A DNA stretch of 64,000 bases, taken from positions 1 to 64,000 of the forward strand of contig JALMLS010000562.1 of NCBI GenBank assembly GCA_038496445.1, given 5' to 3'. The translations under genes and the position numbers were made by a program. Each line of letters starts with the position of its first letter. Within the stretch, counting starts at the first letter, position 1. Positions 7,239 to 17,762 of this stretch are shown piece after piece. The stretch is from Trichosphaerium sp. ATCC 40318 (taxonomy: Eukaryota; Protista; Tubulinea). The notes under the pieces were generated by a model. The model ran no database searches. It was given only the letters and a program-made list of their open reading frames with translations, and had not been told where the DNA came from.

Positions 7239-10200
7239 ATGTTGCGATTCGTTAGAGCGAATAAAATCGCTTGCAAGCGAACACGGGCTCCAAATCGAAC
7301 TCATTGGCGTGTTTCTGCTCGTAGACGTTACTGTACTCTACAAGAGGCAAATAACGATGAACCAGTAGCCGAAATTGAGCAGACAAACGAAATAGTTGAA
7401 GAGGTCCAAGACACGTTTGAAAAGGTCTTGGCGCCCGACTTGGAAGGTGTAGAGATACTACCACCTATTGCAGACGACCCAGCTAATGAAATTATTGCCG
7501 ACGCGCCTGTACAGACACATACACCTGTCATTCCAGAACCGTCGCGTAAACCACTAGACATCAAGGCCGCACAAGGTACTTTGAACTCAGAATAAGATAA
7601 CTTCATTTTAACGCTTTTCGCTGTCAGATCAAGTACTTCTAATAGATGGTCTTGGCTTCCTGTGGCGAGCATTTTACGCCAAAACAGGTAAAATTGAGAC
7701 ACCTCAGGGAGAGGACGCAAGAGCTTTTCATGGTTTTATGCAATCATTGTTTAAGCTGCTTAAAGTGTGTCCGTCTGGTTATGTTGGTAAGTTAGTCGCT
7801 GATACTGTGAGACTGGGGTAGTGCTGATACAGATTTTTAGTTGTTTGCTTGGATGCTGGAAGAAAGAGTTTCAGGAATAGGTTGTATCCACCTTACAAGA
7901 AAAATAGGCCACCAAAGCAGCACCTCATACAGAAACAACTTGTTTTTGTCAAGGAAGCACTTCGTGAATTGAATATTGCAGTTGCGTAGTGTTCTTTTTG
8001 TGGACAAAAACTCTTTCTATGAAAATTTGACACATCATTTCATTTTTTCGTTTGACACATTGCATAGTATGTCGAAAAATCAAATTATGAAGCAGATGAT
8101 ATTATTGCTACTATTGCAAAGGAGGCTGTATTTGCCGGAAAGAAGGTAAATTTATATTTGATTTTAATGCATAGTGATCTAAACCTATACAGGTTATTAT
8201 TGCTGGTAAAGACAAGGATCTCATGCAACTTATTGATGAAAAAGTGCAACTATATGACTCTGGAAAATTTTATGGTAACAAATTTTGGTGTTAGATTCAA
8301 GGAAGCTGACTTTATTTAAAGGTCCTGAGGAAGTACGCAATAAATTCGGTGTTGAACCTCAACAGTTACCGGATTTCCATGCACTTGTAGGAGATAGTGC
8401 TGATAACAGTATGTTGTCGTCAATTCAATTAATCTTAATGCGTTTGTTAGTACCTGGAGTACCTTCTATTGGTAAAAAGGGCGCAGCTCAATTAATTTGT
8501 GAGTTTGGAGATCTTGACACCTTGCTGGGTAATCTGGCAGAAGTAAAGGATCCTAAAAAGCGAGAGAGGTAATTAGTTTTTTTAGGATAGTAGAAGAATA
8601 AATTTAATTTATACTCTAGGCTTAAAGAAAATGCTCGTATGTTAGAGCTTTATTATGAACTCGCTCGATTACGTCGTGATATTACCTTACCTGCACTTGA
8701 GAATCTTGTTGCAAATTTTAACGGAGAAGCTGGAAAAAACCATTTCGAGTTTTTCAACTTTAAACATTTTTTCAAGCCTTTGGATATGTTGAATGAAATA
8801 TACAAACAAATACGACCTGTTGAAGATCGCAAAGAAGTCATGCTTCAAGAAGAACTTGATGCTATATATGAAGCCGACGATCTCACAGACGAATCGCCGA
8901 GAGAGTTTGTTGCCATGGAAGTACGTTAATTTTTTTAGTCGCTTCAGCGCCTTGCCCTTATCTCGCTTAGAAAGCAGCTGCGACTGAAGGTCCTTCGTTA
9001 TATCCTACTCTTGATCAAGTGGATCTTTTCCAAGGTGAAAAGACGGAAGGTAAAGCAACACCGGTGTCGGATATGCCAGTACCAGAGAAAAACAAACAGG
9101 TAGCTATCACCTGTGTATATCCTTCAATTAAATATTACTAGCTACCTGATATGCCTCCTGTAAGATCAAATGGTTTCCCACAGGATCATTGGGATATCAT
9201 GCATGACAAACAGTATCAAAAGAGTCTCTTTAAGCGTATTGCTAGAGGTACTGTTTCAAGGTGTTTTTGTTATCATTCTAAAACTATTAACTAGATTGGA
9301 AGCCTGCATACAAAAAAGTGAAGGGAGTAACAATAGTCAATGATAAGAAATCCGCAGAAAGGGTGATAAAGATGCTATATGAGTACAAAGACAGGTAAAT
9401 ACTACGACTATTTACGACTCTGACAATACATAGATATCATGCTTGTGATACTGAGGCAATTGGTTTGGATTTGAAAAAAATGAACGCTGTTGGATCTGGT
9501 GTTGTTTTTGCTGCTTCAATATACCTCGGTAAGTTTACTTTAGTTTCATACATCTGATGATCCTGTTAACTAAGTTGTTAGGACCTGATTTGGACTTTGG
9601 AAATGGACCAAGAATTTTTATTGACAATCTAGACCGCGCTAATGGTACCCTTGAGCTTTTCAAGGATTACTTTGAAGATGAAGAAATCCTTAAAGTGTGG
9701 CACAACTATTCCTTTGATAGGGCAGTTTTGTATAATCATGGTATACTCTGTGAGGTAATGAGGTTCTTTATTGTCTTTTAAAATCTTACGTTTTGTTACA
9801 GGGTTTGGGCGCTGATACTATACATATGGCAAGGTTGTATGATACTTCAAGAGATTCATTTAGTTTGGAGTCTCTTTCAAAGGTTTGTAAAAAATCTTTA
9901 GTGTCAGAAATTCATTACGTTGTTAATAGGATTTACTTGGCTCAAAAGAGCATAAAAGAAGCATGAAAGACCGATTCTCCGAACCTAAGAAGGAAGGATC
10001 AAAGATGATGGTTCTTCCTGAGTTGGATGATTTACAGCGCAACCCAGAAAAAGTAGAAGAATGGATAGGTACGCATTATTTTCTGACAATACGGTCGAAT
10101 TAATATTCTTGTAGACTATTGTACTTTGGATACAGTTGCTACTTGGGAACTTCGAGAGAAACTTGAGGTACTATACGTACCTGCTTAACTCTTGTTCTTA

Positions 10201-12939
10201 CTCAGTTAAAGGGTTTCCTCAGGAAGAGACCTTGGGAAGCAAAATACTTATGGGATGAAGTGCGATCTTAAATTATAAGATTTGATGTCAAAAGTGAATT
10301 TTGACGTTTTTAGAACCCTGTGAACACAAAAACTATGTTTGATTTGTACTTTGATTTATGGAGACCATTTGGTACTTGTTTAACGAATATCGAACGTCGT
10401 GGTGTCAAGGTATGCATGTTATTAACATTGTTTCAGCCAATATTAATTATACGCAATGTAGGTTAATGTAGATTACTTAAAACTCCTTGAACCACTGGCG
10501 GAACAAGATATCAAGAAATACCATGACTTCTTCCGTAGATGGGCTATTAAACACTGTGATGATGCAAAATACATGAATGCTTGTACGAGAACAGCTATTG
10601 GTTGTCCAAACAGTTTACTAAGACTAACCTGTAGCGTCTGATGCACAACTTCAACAACTGCTGTTTGCACCTTGTAACAATAAGAAGAACACTTCATTGA
10701 AACGTGAAGCTGAGAAGACTTTTACTATCATCTTCCAGGATGAAGAATGGGCAGAAATGGAGAAACAAGCTGAGCTTGAAGCTGCTATAGCAGCAAAAGA
10801 AGAAGAAGAGGCTAAAGCTAAAGAGACTGATTTTGAAGAAGTAGAAGAAGATCTTGGTGAAGCTCATGGAGGAGCTATTTCTTCTGATGCTGTTAATGAA
10901 GAAGTAGAACAAGATCTTGAGGATGAAGAGGGTACTGATGTGGATTGGATTCAAGAAGACAAGACACCAAAGAAGAAAAAGAAGAAGAAATCTAAAAAAG
11001 CAAAAGCAAAGGAAGAGGAGTTTGGAGAAGAAGACGTATGAAAAATACTTTGTGATTTAGTACCCTTTTTTGTTCTTTTCTTTTAATGATTTATTAGTTG
11101 TTTGAAGATGAAGAGGCTCCAGAAGAACCACCAAAGAAGAAGAGGAAGAAAGTCAATAAGAAAGAGATTGTCCTCAAAGGCATGGGTTTGCCATACTTTG
11201 TACGTCTTGTTTAAAGAAGTAGCAAGCGTTTAACGTTGTGTGTTAATTTTAGGATGTAACAGCATCAGGGTGGCCAGCTGTTAGTGCAGATGCTTTGCGT
11301 AAGTTGGCAGGTGAACCACCAAACAAGTATGGTGCATTGTTCAGATACCAGAAACTTCGAAGAGGTACACTTTGGTGGCTACGACACTAGTTGTTATACA
11401 CTAACAAATATACTATAGCTGGACAAAATAATGCCATGTATGCTTGTGAAGCTATTAGCGCATTGACTAAGGCATCACAAATTGAAGTTCTCTTGAACAC
11501 TTTTATAAAGCCATTGCAAGGTAAAGCTGTTTAACTTTTTTTTTGTTTGTTAACACGTGTTTTGTATAGTTATTCCAGACGAAAATGGGCGTATTCATGC
11601 ATCATTGAATATCAATACAGAAACTGGACGACTTTCTTGTAGAAAACCTAATCTACAAAATCAACCAGCTTATGACAAAGACACTTACAGGATTCGTTCA
11701 GCATTTACCTGTGAGCCAGGAAACAGTCTTATTGGTACCACCAACATCTTTTTGTTTAATAATTCTGTATTGACCATCGTGTAGTCGCTGATTATGGGCA
11801 ACTGGAATTAAGGCTTCTTGGACACATTACACGATGTGAGAGTATGTTACAGGCATTCAAAGAAGTACGTATAGAAAGCAGCATTGCTTTTGCATCTAGA
11901 TGCTAACAGGTTTTTGTCAAGGGCGGAGATTTTCACTCAAGGACAGCTGTTGGTATGTACCCAGAGATCAAAGAGGCTCTTGATAAAGGAGAGGTACATA
12001 TATCTATGGTGTACGAGATATTCTTCTTACTAATAATAAACTAGGTTCTTTTGGAATGGGATTACGCCAATGGCAATCCTCCAGCTCCACTTGTAAAAGA
12101 AAAATATGCTACTGAAAGGCGACGAGCTAAGATGCTTAACTTTTCTTTGGCGTATGGTAAAACTGTTGTTGGTCTCTCTAAGGATTGGGGAGTCAGTGAG
12201 ACAGAAGCGCAAAAAACGCTTGACGCTTGGTACGAACAACATACGTAGTTGAGCATAAGAAGCTAACACGAGAGTTAAAAATAGGTATCGAGATAGGCCA
12301 GAAGTTAAAAAATGGCAAATGTGGTCCAAGAGGAGAGCAGAGAAGTATGGTTGGACAAGAACGTTGATGGGTCGGTATCGTCCACTTCCTGCAATGTCAG
12401 AAAGAGGAGCCATGCGAGGTCATGCAGAAAGAGCAGCGATTAATACACCTCTTCAGGTAAATCATTTCTTAAGCCATTGTTTTGTTAGTGCACTTCTGAT
12501 GCATTTTAGGGTGGCGCTGCTGATATTATGGTTAAAGCTATGCTGTTGATAGAAGCACATCCGAGACTAAAAGAACTCAAATGGTTACAAGTGATGCAGA
12601 TTCATGATGAAGTAATTCTAGAGGTAAACAAAAAACCAGCCGTAAGAGTAATTATCTAACTTTATTCAAAAAAGGGACCTGAAGAACACCAAGATGAAGC
12701 ACTTGAGGTACTAACGTTTTAAGCTTATTTGGTGTCTTATTGTATACTATAGATTGTAATGGACCTTATGCGTAACCCAGTTCATCCTGGTGATGTCAAA
12801 AAGCCATTGCTTGTTGATCTCGTTGTAGATAGTAATGTTGGTAAAAACTGGTACGAAAAATGAAGTCTTTAAGTTGTTTTTTTTGCTAAGCTACAACTTG
12901 TGTTTTCTGACTTTTTTGTAAAGGTATGAAGCCAAGTAA
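7239..12939 (+). CDS. Organellar family A DNA polymerase (POP type) with 5'-3' exonuclease, 3'-5' exonuclease and polymerase domains
   Basis: Arg-rich transit-peptide-like N-terminus; YEADD, DKDLMQL, GDSADN-IPGV (5'-3' exo); CDTE, VWHNYSFD (3'-5' exo); TETGRLS, ADYGQLELR, ERRRAKMLNFSLAYGKT, ERAAINTPLQG, QIHDE; ends NWYEAK. Confidence 0.95.
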
Positions 12940-13293
12940 GTATCTCGATTCATTTTTTATTTTGGGAATGGAGGGCATGTATAATAAAAAACTGGTTGGA
13001 AGAACAATTCGAATGAAGTCTGAGAACATATTATGTAATATTTGTTGAACCAGTTGCATTTTGTTTGAGAAATATTGACGTCAGAAATGATGATCAACCT
13101 ACGGTTTGCCGTTAAGGTAGAAACATTATCAAACATCAGCAGGATGTTTTACATTAATAGTATTAACTCGTTTCTCTGAAGAGTTCCAGCAATTCTCCTG
13201 TTTCGTACCGTTTTGTGAACTTTAAGTCACCTCAAGATAATAAAGTCATCATTCTGACGATCCAACTTGTTCAAAGACTGGTTTAGTAGTGTC

Positions 13294-14886
13294 ATGGCAA
13301 ATACTGATATTTGGGAAGCTGAAGAGATACTAAAACGGCGAAATACGAAGGTTGGGTCAACTACAAGAATAAAAGTAACTGTCTTTAGACCGGAACGGAA
13401 TACCTAGTTAAGTGGTGCGGCTATGGAGTAGAAGACGCAACTTGGGAGGTAAAAGCAATCAAGAACAGCAAGTAAACACGTTGTAACTCTCTACATAGCC
13501 TGAGGATGACGTAGACGATGTTTTAATCTATAAATTCGTTTCCAGAAAGAAAGTACATAAACAACCCTCAAAACAAGCGTCAAAAAGTAAAAAGAAGCGT
13601 AACAAAGCCAAAGAACCACAACCAGCACTTACAGTAAATCCAAAAGAACTTTTTGATCTAGAATGGGAAAAGGGAGATCCAAGCCACTTTTTCAAGAAGT
13701 ACCCTTACGCTGATGATGGATATGTTAAATCTTTCGATCCAGAGGATAGCAAGACATACCTTGAGTACTTGAAGACATATGGATTCGTTGTTGTTCGTAT
13801 CCTAACAGAGGTAGAATGTGAGGCTTCAGTGAAGGTATGATATTTATCTATTTTTAACTGCAACTTATCACGTGATTTTTTTCGGTATAGGCTTTATTTG
13901 AAGAGGCTAATGAAGCTGCTGCTGATACACAGAAAACAAAGATTTTATTGGAAGATCCAATGACATGGGAGATTGAGAATTGGCCCAGTAGAAGCAAGTT
14001 TTTATTCCGTGGTGCTGCAGTACATCCTATTGCATGGAAAAATAGAGTGAACAAAAATATGTACAAAGTTTTTAGTGAGATTCATGGAACAAAGAGATTA
14101 TGGACTTCAATAGACTTTTGGAGTCTAATGCGTGGTTCATCAAATCTACGGTTTGTTAAAGAAGATACAAAGGAAGTTTACTATACATCAAGAAAAGACT
14201 GGCGTTATCAACTTTCTCTTCATTGGGATCTAAATCCATGGGATTATGTACAAAGGATAGAAAAAGGTCTTACAGCAAGATATCAGGCTCTTGTAGCTTT
14301 AGTAGATTGTCCGCAATCTGTAGGCGGATTCTTACCTGTACCAGGATCTACACGTTATCTTCCTAGATGGTATGTGTTTTTTTTAATTTTAGAAACTTTT
14401 CTTTTATTTGTGCTGTTGACAGTACCAGTGCATTGTATTGTTGTTTGTCCTGCCATAATGTTAATATGTTAGGTGTTCAAAACATAAGAAGAAAGAAGGC
14501 GACGTATCTATTCGTGTGCCTGCTGGTGACATTATGCAAAAACACACACAAAGAGTGCGTTTTCATTTTTTAAAACTCTACTGTCATTTCTTGTTACTTT
14601 TTTGTACAACTTACATCTGTACAAGATTCCAATACGTAAGGGTGAGATGGTTATTTGGAATTCTGGCTGTGCACATGCAAACTATTCAAATAACTCTGAT
14701 AAAATGAGGTTAATACAATTTGTTAAAATGGCGCCTGCCAAAAAAGAGTGCTATGATAGAGAAAAAAGGGCAGCTCCTCGTATGTTGGATGATGTACCAT
14801 CTCTTAGAGAAGAGCTATCAAAGATACAACTTGATGATTTTGGAAAAAAACTATTTGGACTCAAAGATTGGACTGCAGATGATTAA
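13294..14886 (+). CDS. Chromodomain fused to PhyH-like 2OG-Fe(II) dioxygenase
   Basis: N-terminal IWEAEEILKRR..EYLVKWCGYGVEDATWEPE; then YGFVVV, LHWD, YQALVAL, GGFLPVPGS, GEMVIWNSGCAHAN..R. One reading frame via GT-AG introns. Confidence 0.85.
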
Positions 14887-15160
14887 AGCATATAACTCTT
14901 GTAATAACATATTGAATCGACACATACAATAGGTCTAATGGTCAAGTTTTGAACAAATGGTAAAGTCCATGACTAGTGTTAAGCAGACTTTACAGGGTAG
15001 GCAAGATAAAAACAGTTTAAATTGAAATAAACACCTTTTACTGTCCCTTAAAAGGGTTCTGGGCAAGTTGGTTTGTTTTCCTTCACTAAGAGTACTCCTG
15101 TGGATGCTTACTAAGGGTTCTCCTGTGGTATATATTATATATTTTCTTTTTTAATGTGTT

Positions 15161-17762
15161 TTACAAGTTTTCTTCTTCTTTTACATTTAGCCAACTCTTT
15201 CTTCTATCTCTTTTAGAGGAAGTTGACAATAATCCTCCATCATACATTTTCGTTACTTTCATTGTGAAAACATCAGGTTCTTTAGGTTCTTTAGGTGGTA
15301 CAGGCGGGGGCCTTTTACGCTTGGGAAACAAAGCAGCATTTGGAGGAGCTGGTGCGCCAACTGAAAAAAAAGTCATTAAGTCGAAAACATCAAAAAATAA
15401 AGAAGACGAACTTGTGTTCCTTTGGCGACCTATACTTTTTCCGTTTGCGTATGGATGTAAAAAAGGTGCTGAAGTACTTCCTACAAGAGGAGGTGGCCTA
15501 TTTGGCGGTCGAGAAGGTTTTAAATATCCTTCAGACTTTGAAGTAGAAAGTAGATTCGGATTGTTATAAATCGCATTGTCGTTTGCATAAGTGCCAATAT
15601 TTGTGTTTGATCTCTTCTGTCCAAAAGATCTTTTTTTTTGTTTCTTAGTATGATCATCGTCTTATGGTATTTTATTATGCGTACTTTATTCGTTTGGAGT
15701 GTTTACCACGCTTAGGTGCACCAAGAGATCTTTTTGAAGAAACTGTTCTAATTTGAGGTGCTTTTTTAGCTGACGGATCTTTCCTGCTCTCTGTCACACT
15801 CACAACGTATCTTGGTAGTATCTATACAATTTAGTCATTAAATATGCTGGATAGGTATGGATAGTATACCTGGTATTCGTTGAAAATCACTAACTCATCA
15901 AAACACAATCCAGATTTTGGTTGAACTGGTTCACCGTATTGATTTACTATCAAACAATAAGAACTTGTTGCAGAATGTTTATATAATGAGTACCAGTGGC
16001 GTAGTGAGCAGTACATCCTTCCATTTGTGGTTTGCCTAGTATTGAAGGCATGTAAGTTTATGTACAATGAGCACGTGCTGATCACATGCGAGAGGACAGC
16101 AGTTCAAGAAAACTGTTGGTGCTATTTTGGTGTACCTTTTAAGCTGATTTTTTTGTTAAGTGGATTCTCTGTTGCAGGATAAGCTTGCCCTGGTATTACA
16201 TAGCAAAGAGCTAGTGTCATCTCTCCTGCATCATCTGGTGAGCAGTATCTCTAGGTTGTAGAAGTTAGAGTTTAAGAAAATGTTGTGATGAGCTTGTGGT
16301 GAGGCTGCGTACTTGGACCATATAAGGAACTGAAGAAGAAAAGTATACCCCATCTCCAAAGTTACCATCTTTGTTCTTAAGACTAGTAGCACCACCTATT
16401 GTTTTTATCAAAAGTAAGAGAGACGTTCAAGCTTGAACTTTTTTTCTTCTTCGTTGTTTCTTTGTTTTTGTTTTAAATAGATACTTACCTAAATTGCATA
16501 GGTTCCATACATCTATATTACTACCTCCAAATACACAAGGGAGAATACTTATCTAAAAAGGAAAATTTAAGTAATTATAAAAGTGTTATGATGGCTTGAA
16601 TGTTTTTTCTTTTTTTTTGTGGATTGTACTTTGGGATCTGCGAGTTTACATTTCGCTATCCGTTTTTGCAAATATTCACTAACAGTATTCCTCTTTGCAC
16701 TACCTTTATCCTATACAAATACAATATTTAACATCAAAAATAAAGTCACAGATGTTGTTGATAGCGAAAAAAAAACCACAAAGACTTACTGTTGTTTTCC
16801 ATCGTTGACTTCTATGTTTTGGATTTTCTGCATTAAAAAATTAGCACATACAATAGCTCTAATATGTAGGAAAATAAAGAGAAAGTACTACCTTTTATAA
16901 CTGTCAACTCGTGATGTTGTATATTGTAGCATTGTTCAAAATTCTTTACCATAGCTTCATTATGTACAGCGTAAATATTAACTATTTTAAACGCTCTACC
17001 ACCTAATTTAAACAAAAAGTTATTGACGCAGGTCGCTATTAAAAGTTCAACAGGTAAACAAAAAGAGTTGTCAACGATGGACATGTATTAGGAAGTCTAT
17101 AATCATGACTTTTAATAAAACTGATAAACGTACTGAGCAGTTGGTTAAATATTGTGTATACTTTCTTGAGTTCTCTTGTGCTTTTTGTATAAACATACTG
17201 AGACTCTTCTTCAAGCCTAGAATCGTATATTTTCAAGGCTTTTGTAGGTTCTTGTCCATCTTCAGCAGGGAGATTTTGCCATCCACGTTGAATCATAAAA
17301 GGCTGACGTCATTCTTAGCACAGGAAGGAAATAACAAAAAACCCAGTTCGAGTACTTACCCTGTCAAATATCCATTCTCTTTTTGTTGAGCCACTATCCA
17401 CTATCCTAGTACAATGATCAACAAACTTAATAGATGACATTGGATTTTATGTAATACTTACTTCAGTTTAAAAGCTTTTGTTCTTTTTGAGACACTAACA
17501 AGTGGCTCAAACTTGTTATTATCAGTGTTCCAATAAAATAAATCTAGAATAAAAACAAAGACTGTCAGCTCCAAACGGGTTTCTCTTTTTATCTTAAAGA
17601 AAAATCACGTGCTTATATCTCCTGGAGGTTCAAATTGTTTGATCGCTGCTTCTTTAAGTTGTTGTACGCTAATGATTGGCACAAGCATAATGTTCTTCAC
17701 ACCTCTGTATTCAACAAGGATTGGTGGTAATGAGTTATCTGTTGCTGCTTTTTGCTCTCCAC
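15161..17762 (-). CDS. PARP/ADP-ribosyltransferase-like domain protein with Pro/Lys-rich tail (5' end not resolved)
   Basis: Spliced GNFGDGVYFSS, LALCYVIPGQAYP, AHYA, FDELVIFNEYQILPRYVV; upstream IVNIYAVHNEAMVKNFE. Confidence 0.7.

What the first reader, a model, noticed from the sequence alone, without database searches (positions are those of the whole stretch)
13294..14886. Chromodomain fused to a PhyH-like dioxygenase: candidate non-JmjC chromatin modifier
Seen: a chromodomain with its aromatic cage residues (W, W, Y) intact, a Lys-rich NLS-like linker (SKKKRNK), and a 2OG-Fe(II) domain with HWD...H and a distal Arg. Known chromatin oxygenases belong to the JmjC, TET/JBP or AlkB families, while PhyH-like enzymes usually act on small molecules. 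Inference: a methyl-lysine reader targeting an unusual hydroxylase or demethylase to histones or modified DNA/RNA bases.
Basis: partly seen in the sequence, partly recalled or inferred. Interest (0 to 1): 0.7.

Follow-up and report, generated by a model that had tools for sequence, protein, structure and literature searches.

The report
Chromodomain fused to PhyH-type oxygenase
An amoeba gene joins a methyl-lysine-reading chromodomain to a seemingly active iron/2-oxoglutarate oxygenase of the PhyH/Gig2 class, a pairing found in none of 175 relatives, but the only RNA assembly available has lost 50 bases in a way that breaks the oxygenase frame, so the full protein is not yet shown to be made.

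Summary
Window 13294-14886 (+) is a six-exon, 424-codon open frame with GT..AG introns throughout. It encodes an HP1/CDY-type chromodomain with cage residues W7, W28 and Y31. A Lys-rich linker follows, then a PhyH/Gig2-class Fe(II)/2OG oxygenase that keeps the family-invariant R203, H262-x-D264, H355 and R366.

RNA contigs tile one transcript, 13239-15012, and confirm four of the five introns as joints. Exon 3 alone encodes both the end of the chromodomain and the start of the oxygenase, so this is one gene, not two.

The catalytic part belongs to a small protist family. Its nearest member is from Trichosphaerium, at 51% identity. None of 175 relatives carries a chromodomain, and I found no paper describing the fusion.

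New here: the only RNA contig across exon 3 is exactly 50 nt short. It lacks 13765-13814 (GT..AG), which leaves a 129-codon chromodomain-only frame. Expression of the full fusion from this copy is therefore not shown.

The substrate is unknown. A chromatin-tethered oxygenase is the best reading, but it is inferred. This scan had already noted the same fusion on other DNA of this genome, as paralogues. Verdict: a new variant of a known kind (reader-oxygenase fusions), of moderate interest.

The parts
13239..15012 (+). Transcript as tiled by RNA contigs: 5' UTR of 55 nt with no ATG, and a 3' UTR of 126 nt
   Evidence: records 2, 3 and 4, with zero depth at 13020-13227 and none at 15013-15166. 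One search shows no upstream ATG.
13294..13350 (+). Exon 1 (aa 1-19): start codon and first chromodomain strand, with cage residue W7 at 13312-13314
   Evidence: The joint at intron 1 (13351-13388, 38 nt, GT..AG) is seen in RNA.
13389..13448 (+). Exon 2 (aa 20-39): chromodomain core, with cage residues W28 (13413-13415) and Y31 (13422-13424)
   Evidence: Pfam Chromo, E 3.3e-7. Aligns to CDYL, CDY and CBX1. Intron 2 (13449-13498, 50 nt) is seen in RNA.
13499..13834 (+). Exon 3 (aa 40-151): chromodomain C-terminal helix (to about 13546), Lys-rich linker (13547-13651) and the start of the oxygenase domain from about 13664
   Evidence: One exon carries both domains.
13765..13814 (+). 50-nt GT..AG segment inside exon 3 that is missing from the RNA contig. 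It encodes the family-conserved YGFVVV strand. Its loss gives a stop at 13819-13821 and a 129-aa product.
   Evidence: record 4: 1101 nt with only 18 letters between 13764 and 13889; 1151 nt expected; translation; the segment is conserved in relatives.
13891..14369 (+). Exon 4 (aa 152-311): oxygenase core with R203 (14044-14046), H262 (14221-14223) and D264 (14227-14229)
   Evidence: Intron 3 (13835-13890) is inferred from the contig pieces. Intron 4 (14370-14472, 103 nt) is seen as a joint.
14473..14554 (+). Exon 5 (aa 311-338)
   Evidence: The joints on both sides are seen in RNA.
14626..14886 (+). Exon 6 (aa 339-424 plus stop): second iron-binding His, H355 (14674-14676), and 2OG-binding R366 (14707-14709)
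   Evidence: Weak Pfam PhyH hit to profile positions 185-211. Intron 5 (14555-14625, 71 nt) is seen in RNA.
13566..13631 (.). 66-nt stretch encoding the NLS-like part of the linker, skipped in frame in a low-depth RNA contig. Its ends are CT..AC, which reads as GT..AG on the minus strand.
   Evidence: joint 13565>13632 at depth 3.6, against 5.4 for the unskipped contig; the skip is in frame.

Best explanation
This is a native, transcribed amoebozoan gene. Its intact 424-codon frame encodes a reader-enzyme fusion of three parts: an HP1/CDY-type chromodomain, a basic NLS-like linker, and a PhyH/Gig2-class Fe(II)/2-oxoglutarate oxygenase with a full catalytic set. Shown: the architecture, the single transcript, the conserved catalytic residues, and the absence of the fusion from all retrieved relatives. 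Inferred: the chromodomain docks on a methylated lysine, most likely a histone H3 tail of the ARKS type. That would hold the oxygenase on marked chromatin. There it would use Fe(II), 2OG and O2 to hydroxylate a nearby C-H bond of a chromatin-bound substrate. The target would more likely be a protein side chain or an N-methyl group than a base. The chromodomain was added in this lineage to an older protist enzyme family whose substrate is unknown.
For: The gene model is open over six exons. Chromo scores above Pfam's cut-off on exon 2 alone, with a CDYL/CBX-like core. Contigs tile 13239-15012 and confirm introns 1, 2, 4 and 5. Exon 3 encodes both domains. The family-invariant R, HxD, H and R residues are all present in the window protein. 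A family profile hits SnoK, SnoN, TlxI and EctD in the PDB. The AF2 model of the nearest relative has pLDDT 92.9. Its best structural matches are Gig2 (Z 22.3) and YbiU (Z 22.0), then PhyH-type enzymes. No chromodomain appears in 150 representatives by Pfam, nor in 175 relatives by local phmmer. Other members carry macromolecule-binding modules: MJ1316 in Reticulomyxa, Ank, TPR and Tma16. This hints at macromolecular partners. Chromodomain fusions to JmjC oxygenases are on record (PMC2938197), so the design principle has precedent.
Against: No substrate is known for this family or for its closest solved folds. Every characterised structural relative acts on a small molecule. The single RNA contig across exon 3 lacks 13765-13814, which ends the frame at codon 129, and no contig shows the retained form. 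The first cage residue is Trp rather than the usual Tyr or Phe, and its placement rests on spacing only. The full spliced protein could not be sent to Pfam or AF2, because it has no reference. Nuclear localisation is only suggested by a basic stretch.
Confidence: 0.45

Rival explanations
1. At this copy the fusion is mostly not translated. Splicing of a 50-nt cryptic intron inside exon 3 gives an mRNA whose frame ends after the chromodomain and linker, at 129 aa. The locus would then yield a reader-only protein or a decay-targeted RNA. The oxygenase part would be either a regulated alternative isoform or a copy that has only recently started to decay.
For: Contig record 4 is 1101 nt against 1151 nt expected. 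Its pieces stop at 13764 and resume with 18 letters before 13889. The depth of bin 13748-13851 (4.45) is fully explained by that contig alone. The missing segment has GT..AG ends and a length typical of this gene's introns.
Against: The downstream 295 codons are open and keep every family-invariant residue. The removed segment encodes a strongly conserved strand of the family. The data are one small run held as contigs only, which drop minor isoforms and cannot measure ratios.
Confidence: 0.25
2. A CDYL-like logic applies: the oxygenase acts on a small metabolite, such as an acyl-CoA-type compound, and the chromodomain merely concentrates that chemistry at marked chromatin.
For: All characterised relatives in sequence and fold act on small molecules: SnoK, TlxI, EctD, KanJ, PhyH. 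The chromodomain core is most similar to CDYL/CDY. In CDYL a chromodomain is fused to a crotonyl-CoA hydratase that lowers histone crotonylation (PMC7069697).
Against: No substrate clue exists for this family. Relatives carry RNA- or protein-binding modules rather than metabolic partners.
Confidence: 0.12
3. The chromodomain targets a non-histone partner, such as a methylated ribosomal, translation or RNA-processing protein. The family would then work on the RNA/translation machinery rather than on chromatin.
For: Relatives are fused to MJ1316, an RNA 2',3'-cyclic-end recognition domain, in P0048 (35.5 bits) and to Tma16. MJ1316 fusions are linked to RNA repair (PMC6514570). Many 2OG oxygenases modify translation components (my own knowledge).
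Against: These fusions occur in distant members, in a different clade of the tree. The chromodomain is of the classical HP1/CDY/CBX type.
Confidence: 0.12
4. The fusion is a gene-model artefact: two adjacent genes wrongly joined.
For: Nothing beyond the fact that relatives lack the chromodomain.
Against: Exon 3 encodes the chromodomain helix, the linker and the oxygenase N-terminus in one frame. RNA contigs overlap across it, and coverage is zero on both flanks of 13239-15012.
Confidence: 0.03

Closest known systems
Protist PhyH/Gig2-like oxygenase family (e.g. Trichosphaerium MMETSP0405 transcript P0001, Thecamonas AMSG_01785, Balamuthia KAL6078392.1)
   Same: The catalytic domain is homologous over about 330 aa, at 51% identity to P0001. 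The invariant R, HxD, H and R residues are shared, as is the conserved N-terminal YP...DGY..SF...YG.VVV motif. Many members also have a basic stretch before the domain.
   Different: None of the 175 members retrieved has a chromodomain. All are uncharacterised.
Gig2 (DUF1479, Candida albicans, 6akz) and YbiU (Yersinia pestis, 4rgk)
   Same: These are the best structural matches to the AF2 model of the nearest relative (Z 22.3 and 22.0, about 280 residues aligned). Pfam Gig2-like is hit by 7 of 150 family members.
   Different: Sequence identity is only 13-14%. They have no reader domain, and their substrates are unknown. The window protein itself was not modelled.
Phytanoyl-CoA 2-hydroxylase and PhyH-type small-molecule oxygenases (SnoK, TlxI, EctD, KanJ, SyrB2)
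   Same: They share the double-stranded beta-helix fold, the HxD...H iron triad and an Arg about 11 residues after the second His. They are found by both profile and fold searches.
   Different: These are stand-alone enzymes of about 270 aa that act on small molecules or carrier-tethered substrates. None is known to act on chromatin.
CDY/CDYL (chromodomain + crotonase-fold enzyme)
   Same: This is the closest match to the chromodomain core. It follows the same design: a metabolic-enzyme fold tethered to a methyl-lysine reader (PMC7069697).
   Different: The catalytic fold and chemistry are unrelated: a hydratase, not an oxygenase.
Chromodomain-JmjC oxygenases (sporadic JMJD6 and KDM4 fusions listed by Iyer et al. 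2010)
   Same: A chromodomain joined to a 2OG/Fe(II) oxygenase for action on chromatin (PMC2938197).
   Different: The catalytic domain is JmjC/JOR, a different superfamily branch. That survey lists no PhyH-type fusion.

Membership tests
Chromo domain (Pfam PF00385) | Profile score above Pfam's gathering cut-off | tested here: met
   Exon 2 alone scores 30.6 bits against a cut-off of 25.1, E 3.3e-7.
Chromo domain (Pfam PF00385) | Three-residue aromatic cage | tested here: inconclusive
   W28 and Y31 align to the W and Y of the CDYL/CBX cores. W7 is placed only by its 21-residue spacing. Exon 1 alone gave no hit.
Chromo domain (Pfam PF00385) | Binds methylated lysine peptides | not testable with these tools
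   Needs peptide arrays or ITC.
PhyH superfamily (Pfam PF05721, classical 2OG/Fe(II) dioxygenases) | Profile score above the gathering cut-off for this protein | tested here: inconclusive
   Only exon pieces could be sent. The best was exon 6, at 14.1 bits against a cut-off of 22. 100 of 150 homologues pass. The spliced protein has no reference, so it was not scanned whole.
PhyH superfamily (Pfam PF05721, classical 2OG/Fe(II) dioxygenases) | HxD...H iron triad and a distal Arg for the 2OG C5 carboxylate | tested here: met
   H262, D264, H355 and R366 sit on the invariant family columns.
PhyH superfamily (Pfam PF05721, classical 2OG/Fe(II) dioxygenases) | Double-stranded beta-helix fold closest to PhyH-type structures | tested here: met
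   Tested by proxy. The AF2 model of the 51%-identical relative P0001 (pLDDT 92.9) matches Gig2, YbiU, TlxI, AsqJ, PHYHD1 and PHYH at Z 15-22.
Gig2-like / DUF1479 (PF07350) | Profile match | tested here: inconclusive
   7 of 150 relatives match, best 4.3e-7. No window exon piece matched. Gig2 is the top structural match.
JmjC, TET/JBP, AlkB chromatin oxygenases | Profile or fold closest to one of these families | tested here: not met
   No such Pfam hit in the window pieces or in 150 relatives. ALKBH3 reaches only Z 9.8, against 22 for Gig2, and no JmjC entry appears in the top 50.
CDY family | Chromodomain plus a crotonase-fold C-terminal domain | tested here: not met
   The C-terminal domain is a PhyH-type oxygenase.

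The most novel reading that the evidence does not exclude
A fourth class of chromatin oxygenase. In this reading, a PhyH/Gig2-type enzyme recruited by its own chromodomain hydroxylates or demethylates histones, or chromatin-bound acyl marks, in an amoebozoan lineage.
Probability: 0.15. Interest if true: 0.8.

Novelty: new variant of a known kind. Interest (0 to 1): 0.5.

Why it matters
Known oxygenases that act on chromatin come from the JmjC, TET/JBP and AlkB branches. If a PhyH/Gig2-type enzyme carrying its own methyl-lysine reader is active on chromatin, it would add an independent origin of such an enzyme. It would also give the first functional handle on an uncharacterised protist family, and indirectly on the DUF1479/Gig2/YbiU fold, whose substrates are unknown. 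The fusion names a testable place of action for an orphan enzyme. The splice variant found here offers a simple test of whether reader-only and reader-enzyme forms coexist.

Tried and rejected
- Exon 4 alone against the PDB by phmmer gave only chance hits (FOXP3, E 0.31).
- Exon 3 gave a weak Cnd1_N hit at 16 bits, taken as chance.
- Exon 1 with one intron codon, and the chromodomain helix piece, gave nothing in the PDB or Pfam because they are too short.
- tblastn of the model against the window found no second copy within these 64 kb.
- A by-sequence look-up in the scan's notes was blank.
- Literature searches for chromodomain with phytanoyl-CoA dioxygenase, PhyH or 2-oxoglutarate found no paper on such a fusion.
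- The DUF1479/YbiU/Gig2 literature held here gives no substrate.
- A tree of the catalytic domain did not resolve the window's sister beyond an unresolved, amoebozoan-rich group.
- I considered whether removing the 50 nt could belong to a productive alternative frame. It cannot: every nearby acceptor gives a stop within four codons (read).
It has no reference, so Pfam, AF2 and word searches on the whole protein were left out. The nearest relative, P0001, served as proxy.
- The paralogues noted elsewhere in this genome could not be fetched.

Full report
**Gene model.** The region is eukaryotic, at about 37% G+C. Read from the sequence and assembled by script, 13294-14886 on the + strand is a six-exon gene. 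The exons are 13294-13350, 13389-13448, 13499-13834, 13891-14369, 14473-14554 and 14626-14886. All five introns (38, 50, 56, 103 and 71 nt) have GT..AG ends. The frame is open for 424 codons. The ATG at 13294 is the first one in the transcript, and an in-frame stop lies 11 codons upstream.

**Chromodomain.**
- Exon 2 alone is 20 residues, yet it scores 30.6 bits (E 3.3e-7) on Pfam Chromo, above the curated cut-off.
- It aligns without gaps to the cores of the CDYL, CDY1, CHD6 and CBX1 chromodomains.
- That alignment places W28 and Y31 on the second and third cage positions.
- W7 sits 21 residues before W28, in a "W-E-A-E-E-I-L" context. The spacing matches Drosophila HP1 Y24/W45/Y48 as I recall it.
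- Exon 1 alone is too short to score, so the first cage residue is inferred.
- A Lys-rich stretch containing SKKKRNK follows, at aa 56-90.

**Oxygenase.** Exon 4 alone was searched by phmmer against 1.84 billion representatives. It found only 230 proteins at E<=1e-3, the best at 4e-49 and 54% identity.
- The named members are protists: Trichosphaerium (taxid 498012), Phalansterium, Nematostelium, Protostelium, Cavostelium, Arcella, Balamuthia, Thecamonas, Reticulomyxa, Ploeotia and Protocruzia.
- A 53-member alignment has invariant R148, H207, H302 and nearly invariant D209, R313, in P0001 numbering.
- Aligned locally with the spliced model, the window protein has R203, H262-W-D264, H355 and R366 on those columns. 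It also has the conserved N-terminal motif of the family.
- 100 of 150 representatives match Pfam PhyH, and 7 match Gig2-like.
- The family profile finds SnoK (5.6e-10), SnoN, TlxI, EctD and SyrB2 in the PDB.
- The nearest relative, P0001, folds with pLDDT 92.9.
- By Foldseek, that model resembles PhyH-type small-molecule enzymes.
- By the exhaustive aligner, it resembles Gig2/DUF1479 of Candida (Z 22.3) and YbiU (Z 22.0) ahead of TlxI, AsqJ, PHYHD1 and PHYH. ALKBH3 reaches only Z 9.8, and no JmjC entry is in the top 50.
- The catalytic module is therefore PhyH/Gig2-class, and by its residues it is apparently active.

**One gene or two.** A small public run (X1, kind not on record) holds 55% of the sampled words, and its contigs skip GT..AG introns. 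It is therefore RNA-derived.
- Laid on 12500-15600, overlapping contigs run from 13239 to 15012.
- There is no coverage at 13020-13227 or at 15013-15166.
- Introns 1, 2, 4 and 5 appear as joints at my coordinates.
- Exon 3 encodes the end of the chromodomain, the linker and the start of the oxygenase. The two-gene reading fails.

**A complication not seen before.** Contig record 4 is 1101 nt long, whereas the six-exon model predicts 1151 nt for 13632-15012.
- Its pieces end at 13764 and resume at 13889, with only 18 letters in between.
- The depth of bin 13748-13851 (4.45) equals this contig's contribution alone. No assembled RNA covers 13765-13814.
- That segment is 50 nt long with GT..AG ends.
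- Its removal gives "...DSKTYLEM" followed by a stop: a 129-residue chromodomain-plus-linker product.
- The same 50 nt encode the YGFVVV strand, which is conserved across the family. It is ancestral coding sequence that is being spliced as an intron in this sample.
- Contigs drop minor forms and come from a single run. This shows that the unproductive form is present. It does not show that the productive form is absent.
- A second, low-depth contig skips 13566-13631 in frame, which removes the basic stretch. Its ends are CT..AC, an intron signature for the opposite strand. I leave this unexplained.

**Distribution of the fusion.**
- Pfam finds Chromo in none of the 150 representatives.
- The precomputed domains of 22 word-search hits show none.
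- Local phmmer with the window's chromodomain finds none among 175 relatives.
- The close relatives begin with Met and have short basic N-termini, so the absence is real and not due to truncation.
- Other members carry MJ1316 (Reticulomyxa P0048, 35.5 bits), ankyrin, TPR, Tma16 or a HAD/NIF phosphatase domain. This hints weakly at macromolecular partners.
- The tree places the window's domain in an unresolved group rich in amoebozoans.

**Earlier notes of this scan.** They report the same fusion at five other places in this genome. One is described as an intact seven-exon gene and one as frameshifted. I could not fetch those copies. The notes' claim that no relative and no paper shows the combination agrees with my independent searches.

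**Literature.** No paper joins a chromodomain with a PhyH-type enzyme. Iyer et al. 2010 list chromodomain fusions to the JMJD6 and KDM4 JmjC families, and they predict protein substrates for some bacterial PhyH-type enzymes (PMC2938197). CDYL, the best match to this chromodomain core, couples a chromodomain to a crotonyl-CoA hydratase (PMC7069697).

**Verdict.** The best-supported mechanism is a reader-tethered oxygenase acting on marked chromatin, but the substrate, the localisation and even translation of the full-length form from this copy remain untested. I rate it a new variant of a known kind, with interest 0.5.

Noticed in passing
window 13566-13631: A low-depth RNA contig (depth 3.6, against 5.4 for the unskipped path) skips 66 nt in frame, removing the NLS-like basic stretch. 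The ends are CT..AC, the signature of a GT..AG intron on the opposite strand. It could be an antisense transcript, an allelic indel or an isoform.
   Followed up: partly
window 8285-13019 (+): The upstream neighbour is a family-A DNA polymerase gene with a 5'-3' exonuclease domain (Pfam 5_3_exonuc and DNA_pol_A on exon ORFs). Three of its last introns (12622-12672, 12706-12750, 12850-12922) are confirmed by RNA joints.
   Followed up: partly
P0048 (Reticulomyxa filosa RFI_04399), P0155: Relatives of the oxygenase carry an N-terminal MJ1316 domain, which recognises RNA 2',3'-cyclic ends. The hit is above Pfam's cut-off in P0048 and weak in P0155. Other members carry ankyrin (P0099), TPR (P0128), Tma16, or a C-terminal HAD/NIF phosphatase domain (P0124).
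   Followed up: partly
P0016, P0151, P0152 (Balamuthia mandrillaris KAL6078392.1 and variants): These members of the oxygenase family are named 'Sodium channel protein type 8 subunit alpha' in the source record. This looks like a mis-annotation.
   Followed up: no
window 15167-15600: A separate transcribed region lies downstream (two RNA contigs). It is separated from this gene by an uncovered gap at 15013-15166. ORFs there have no Pfam match.
   Followed up: no
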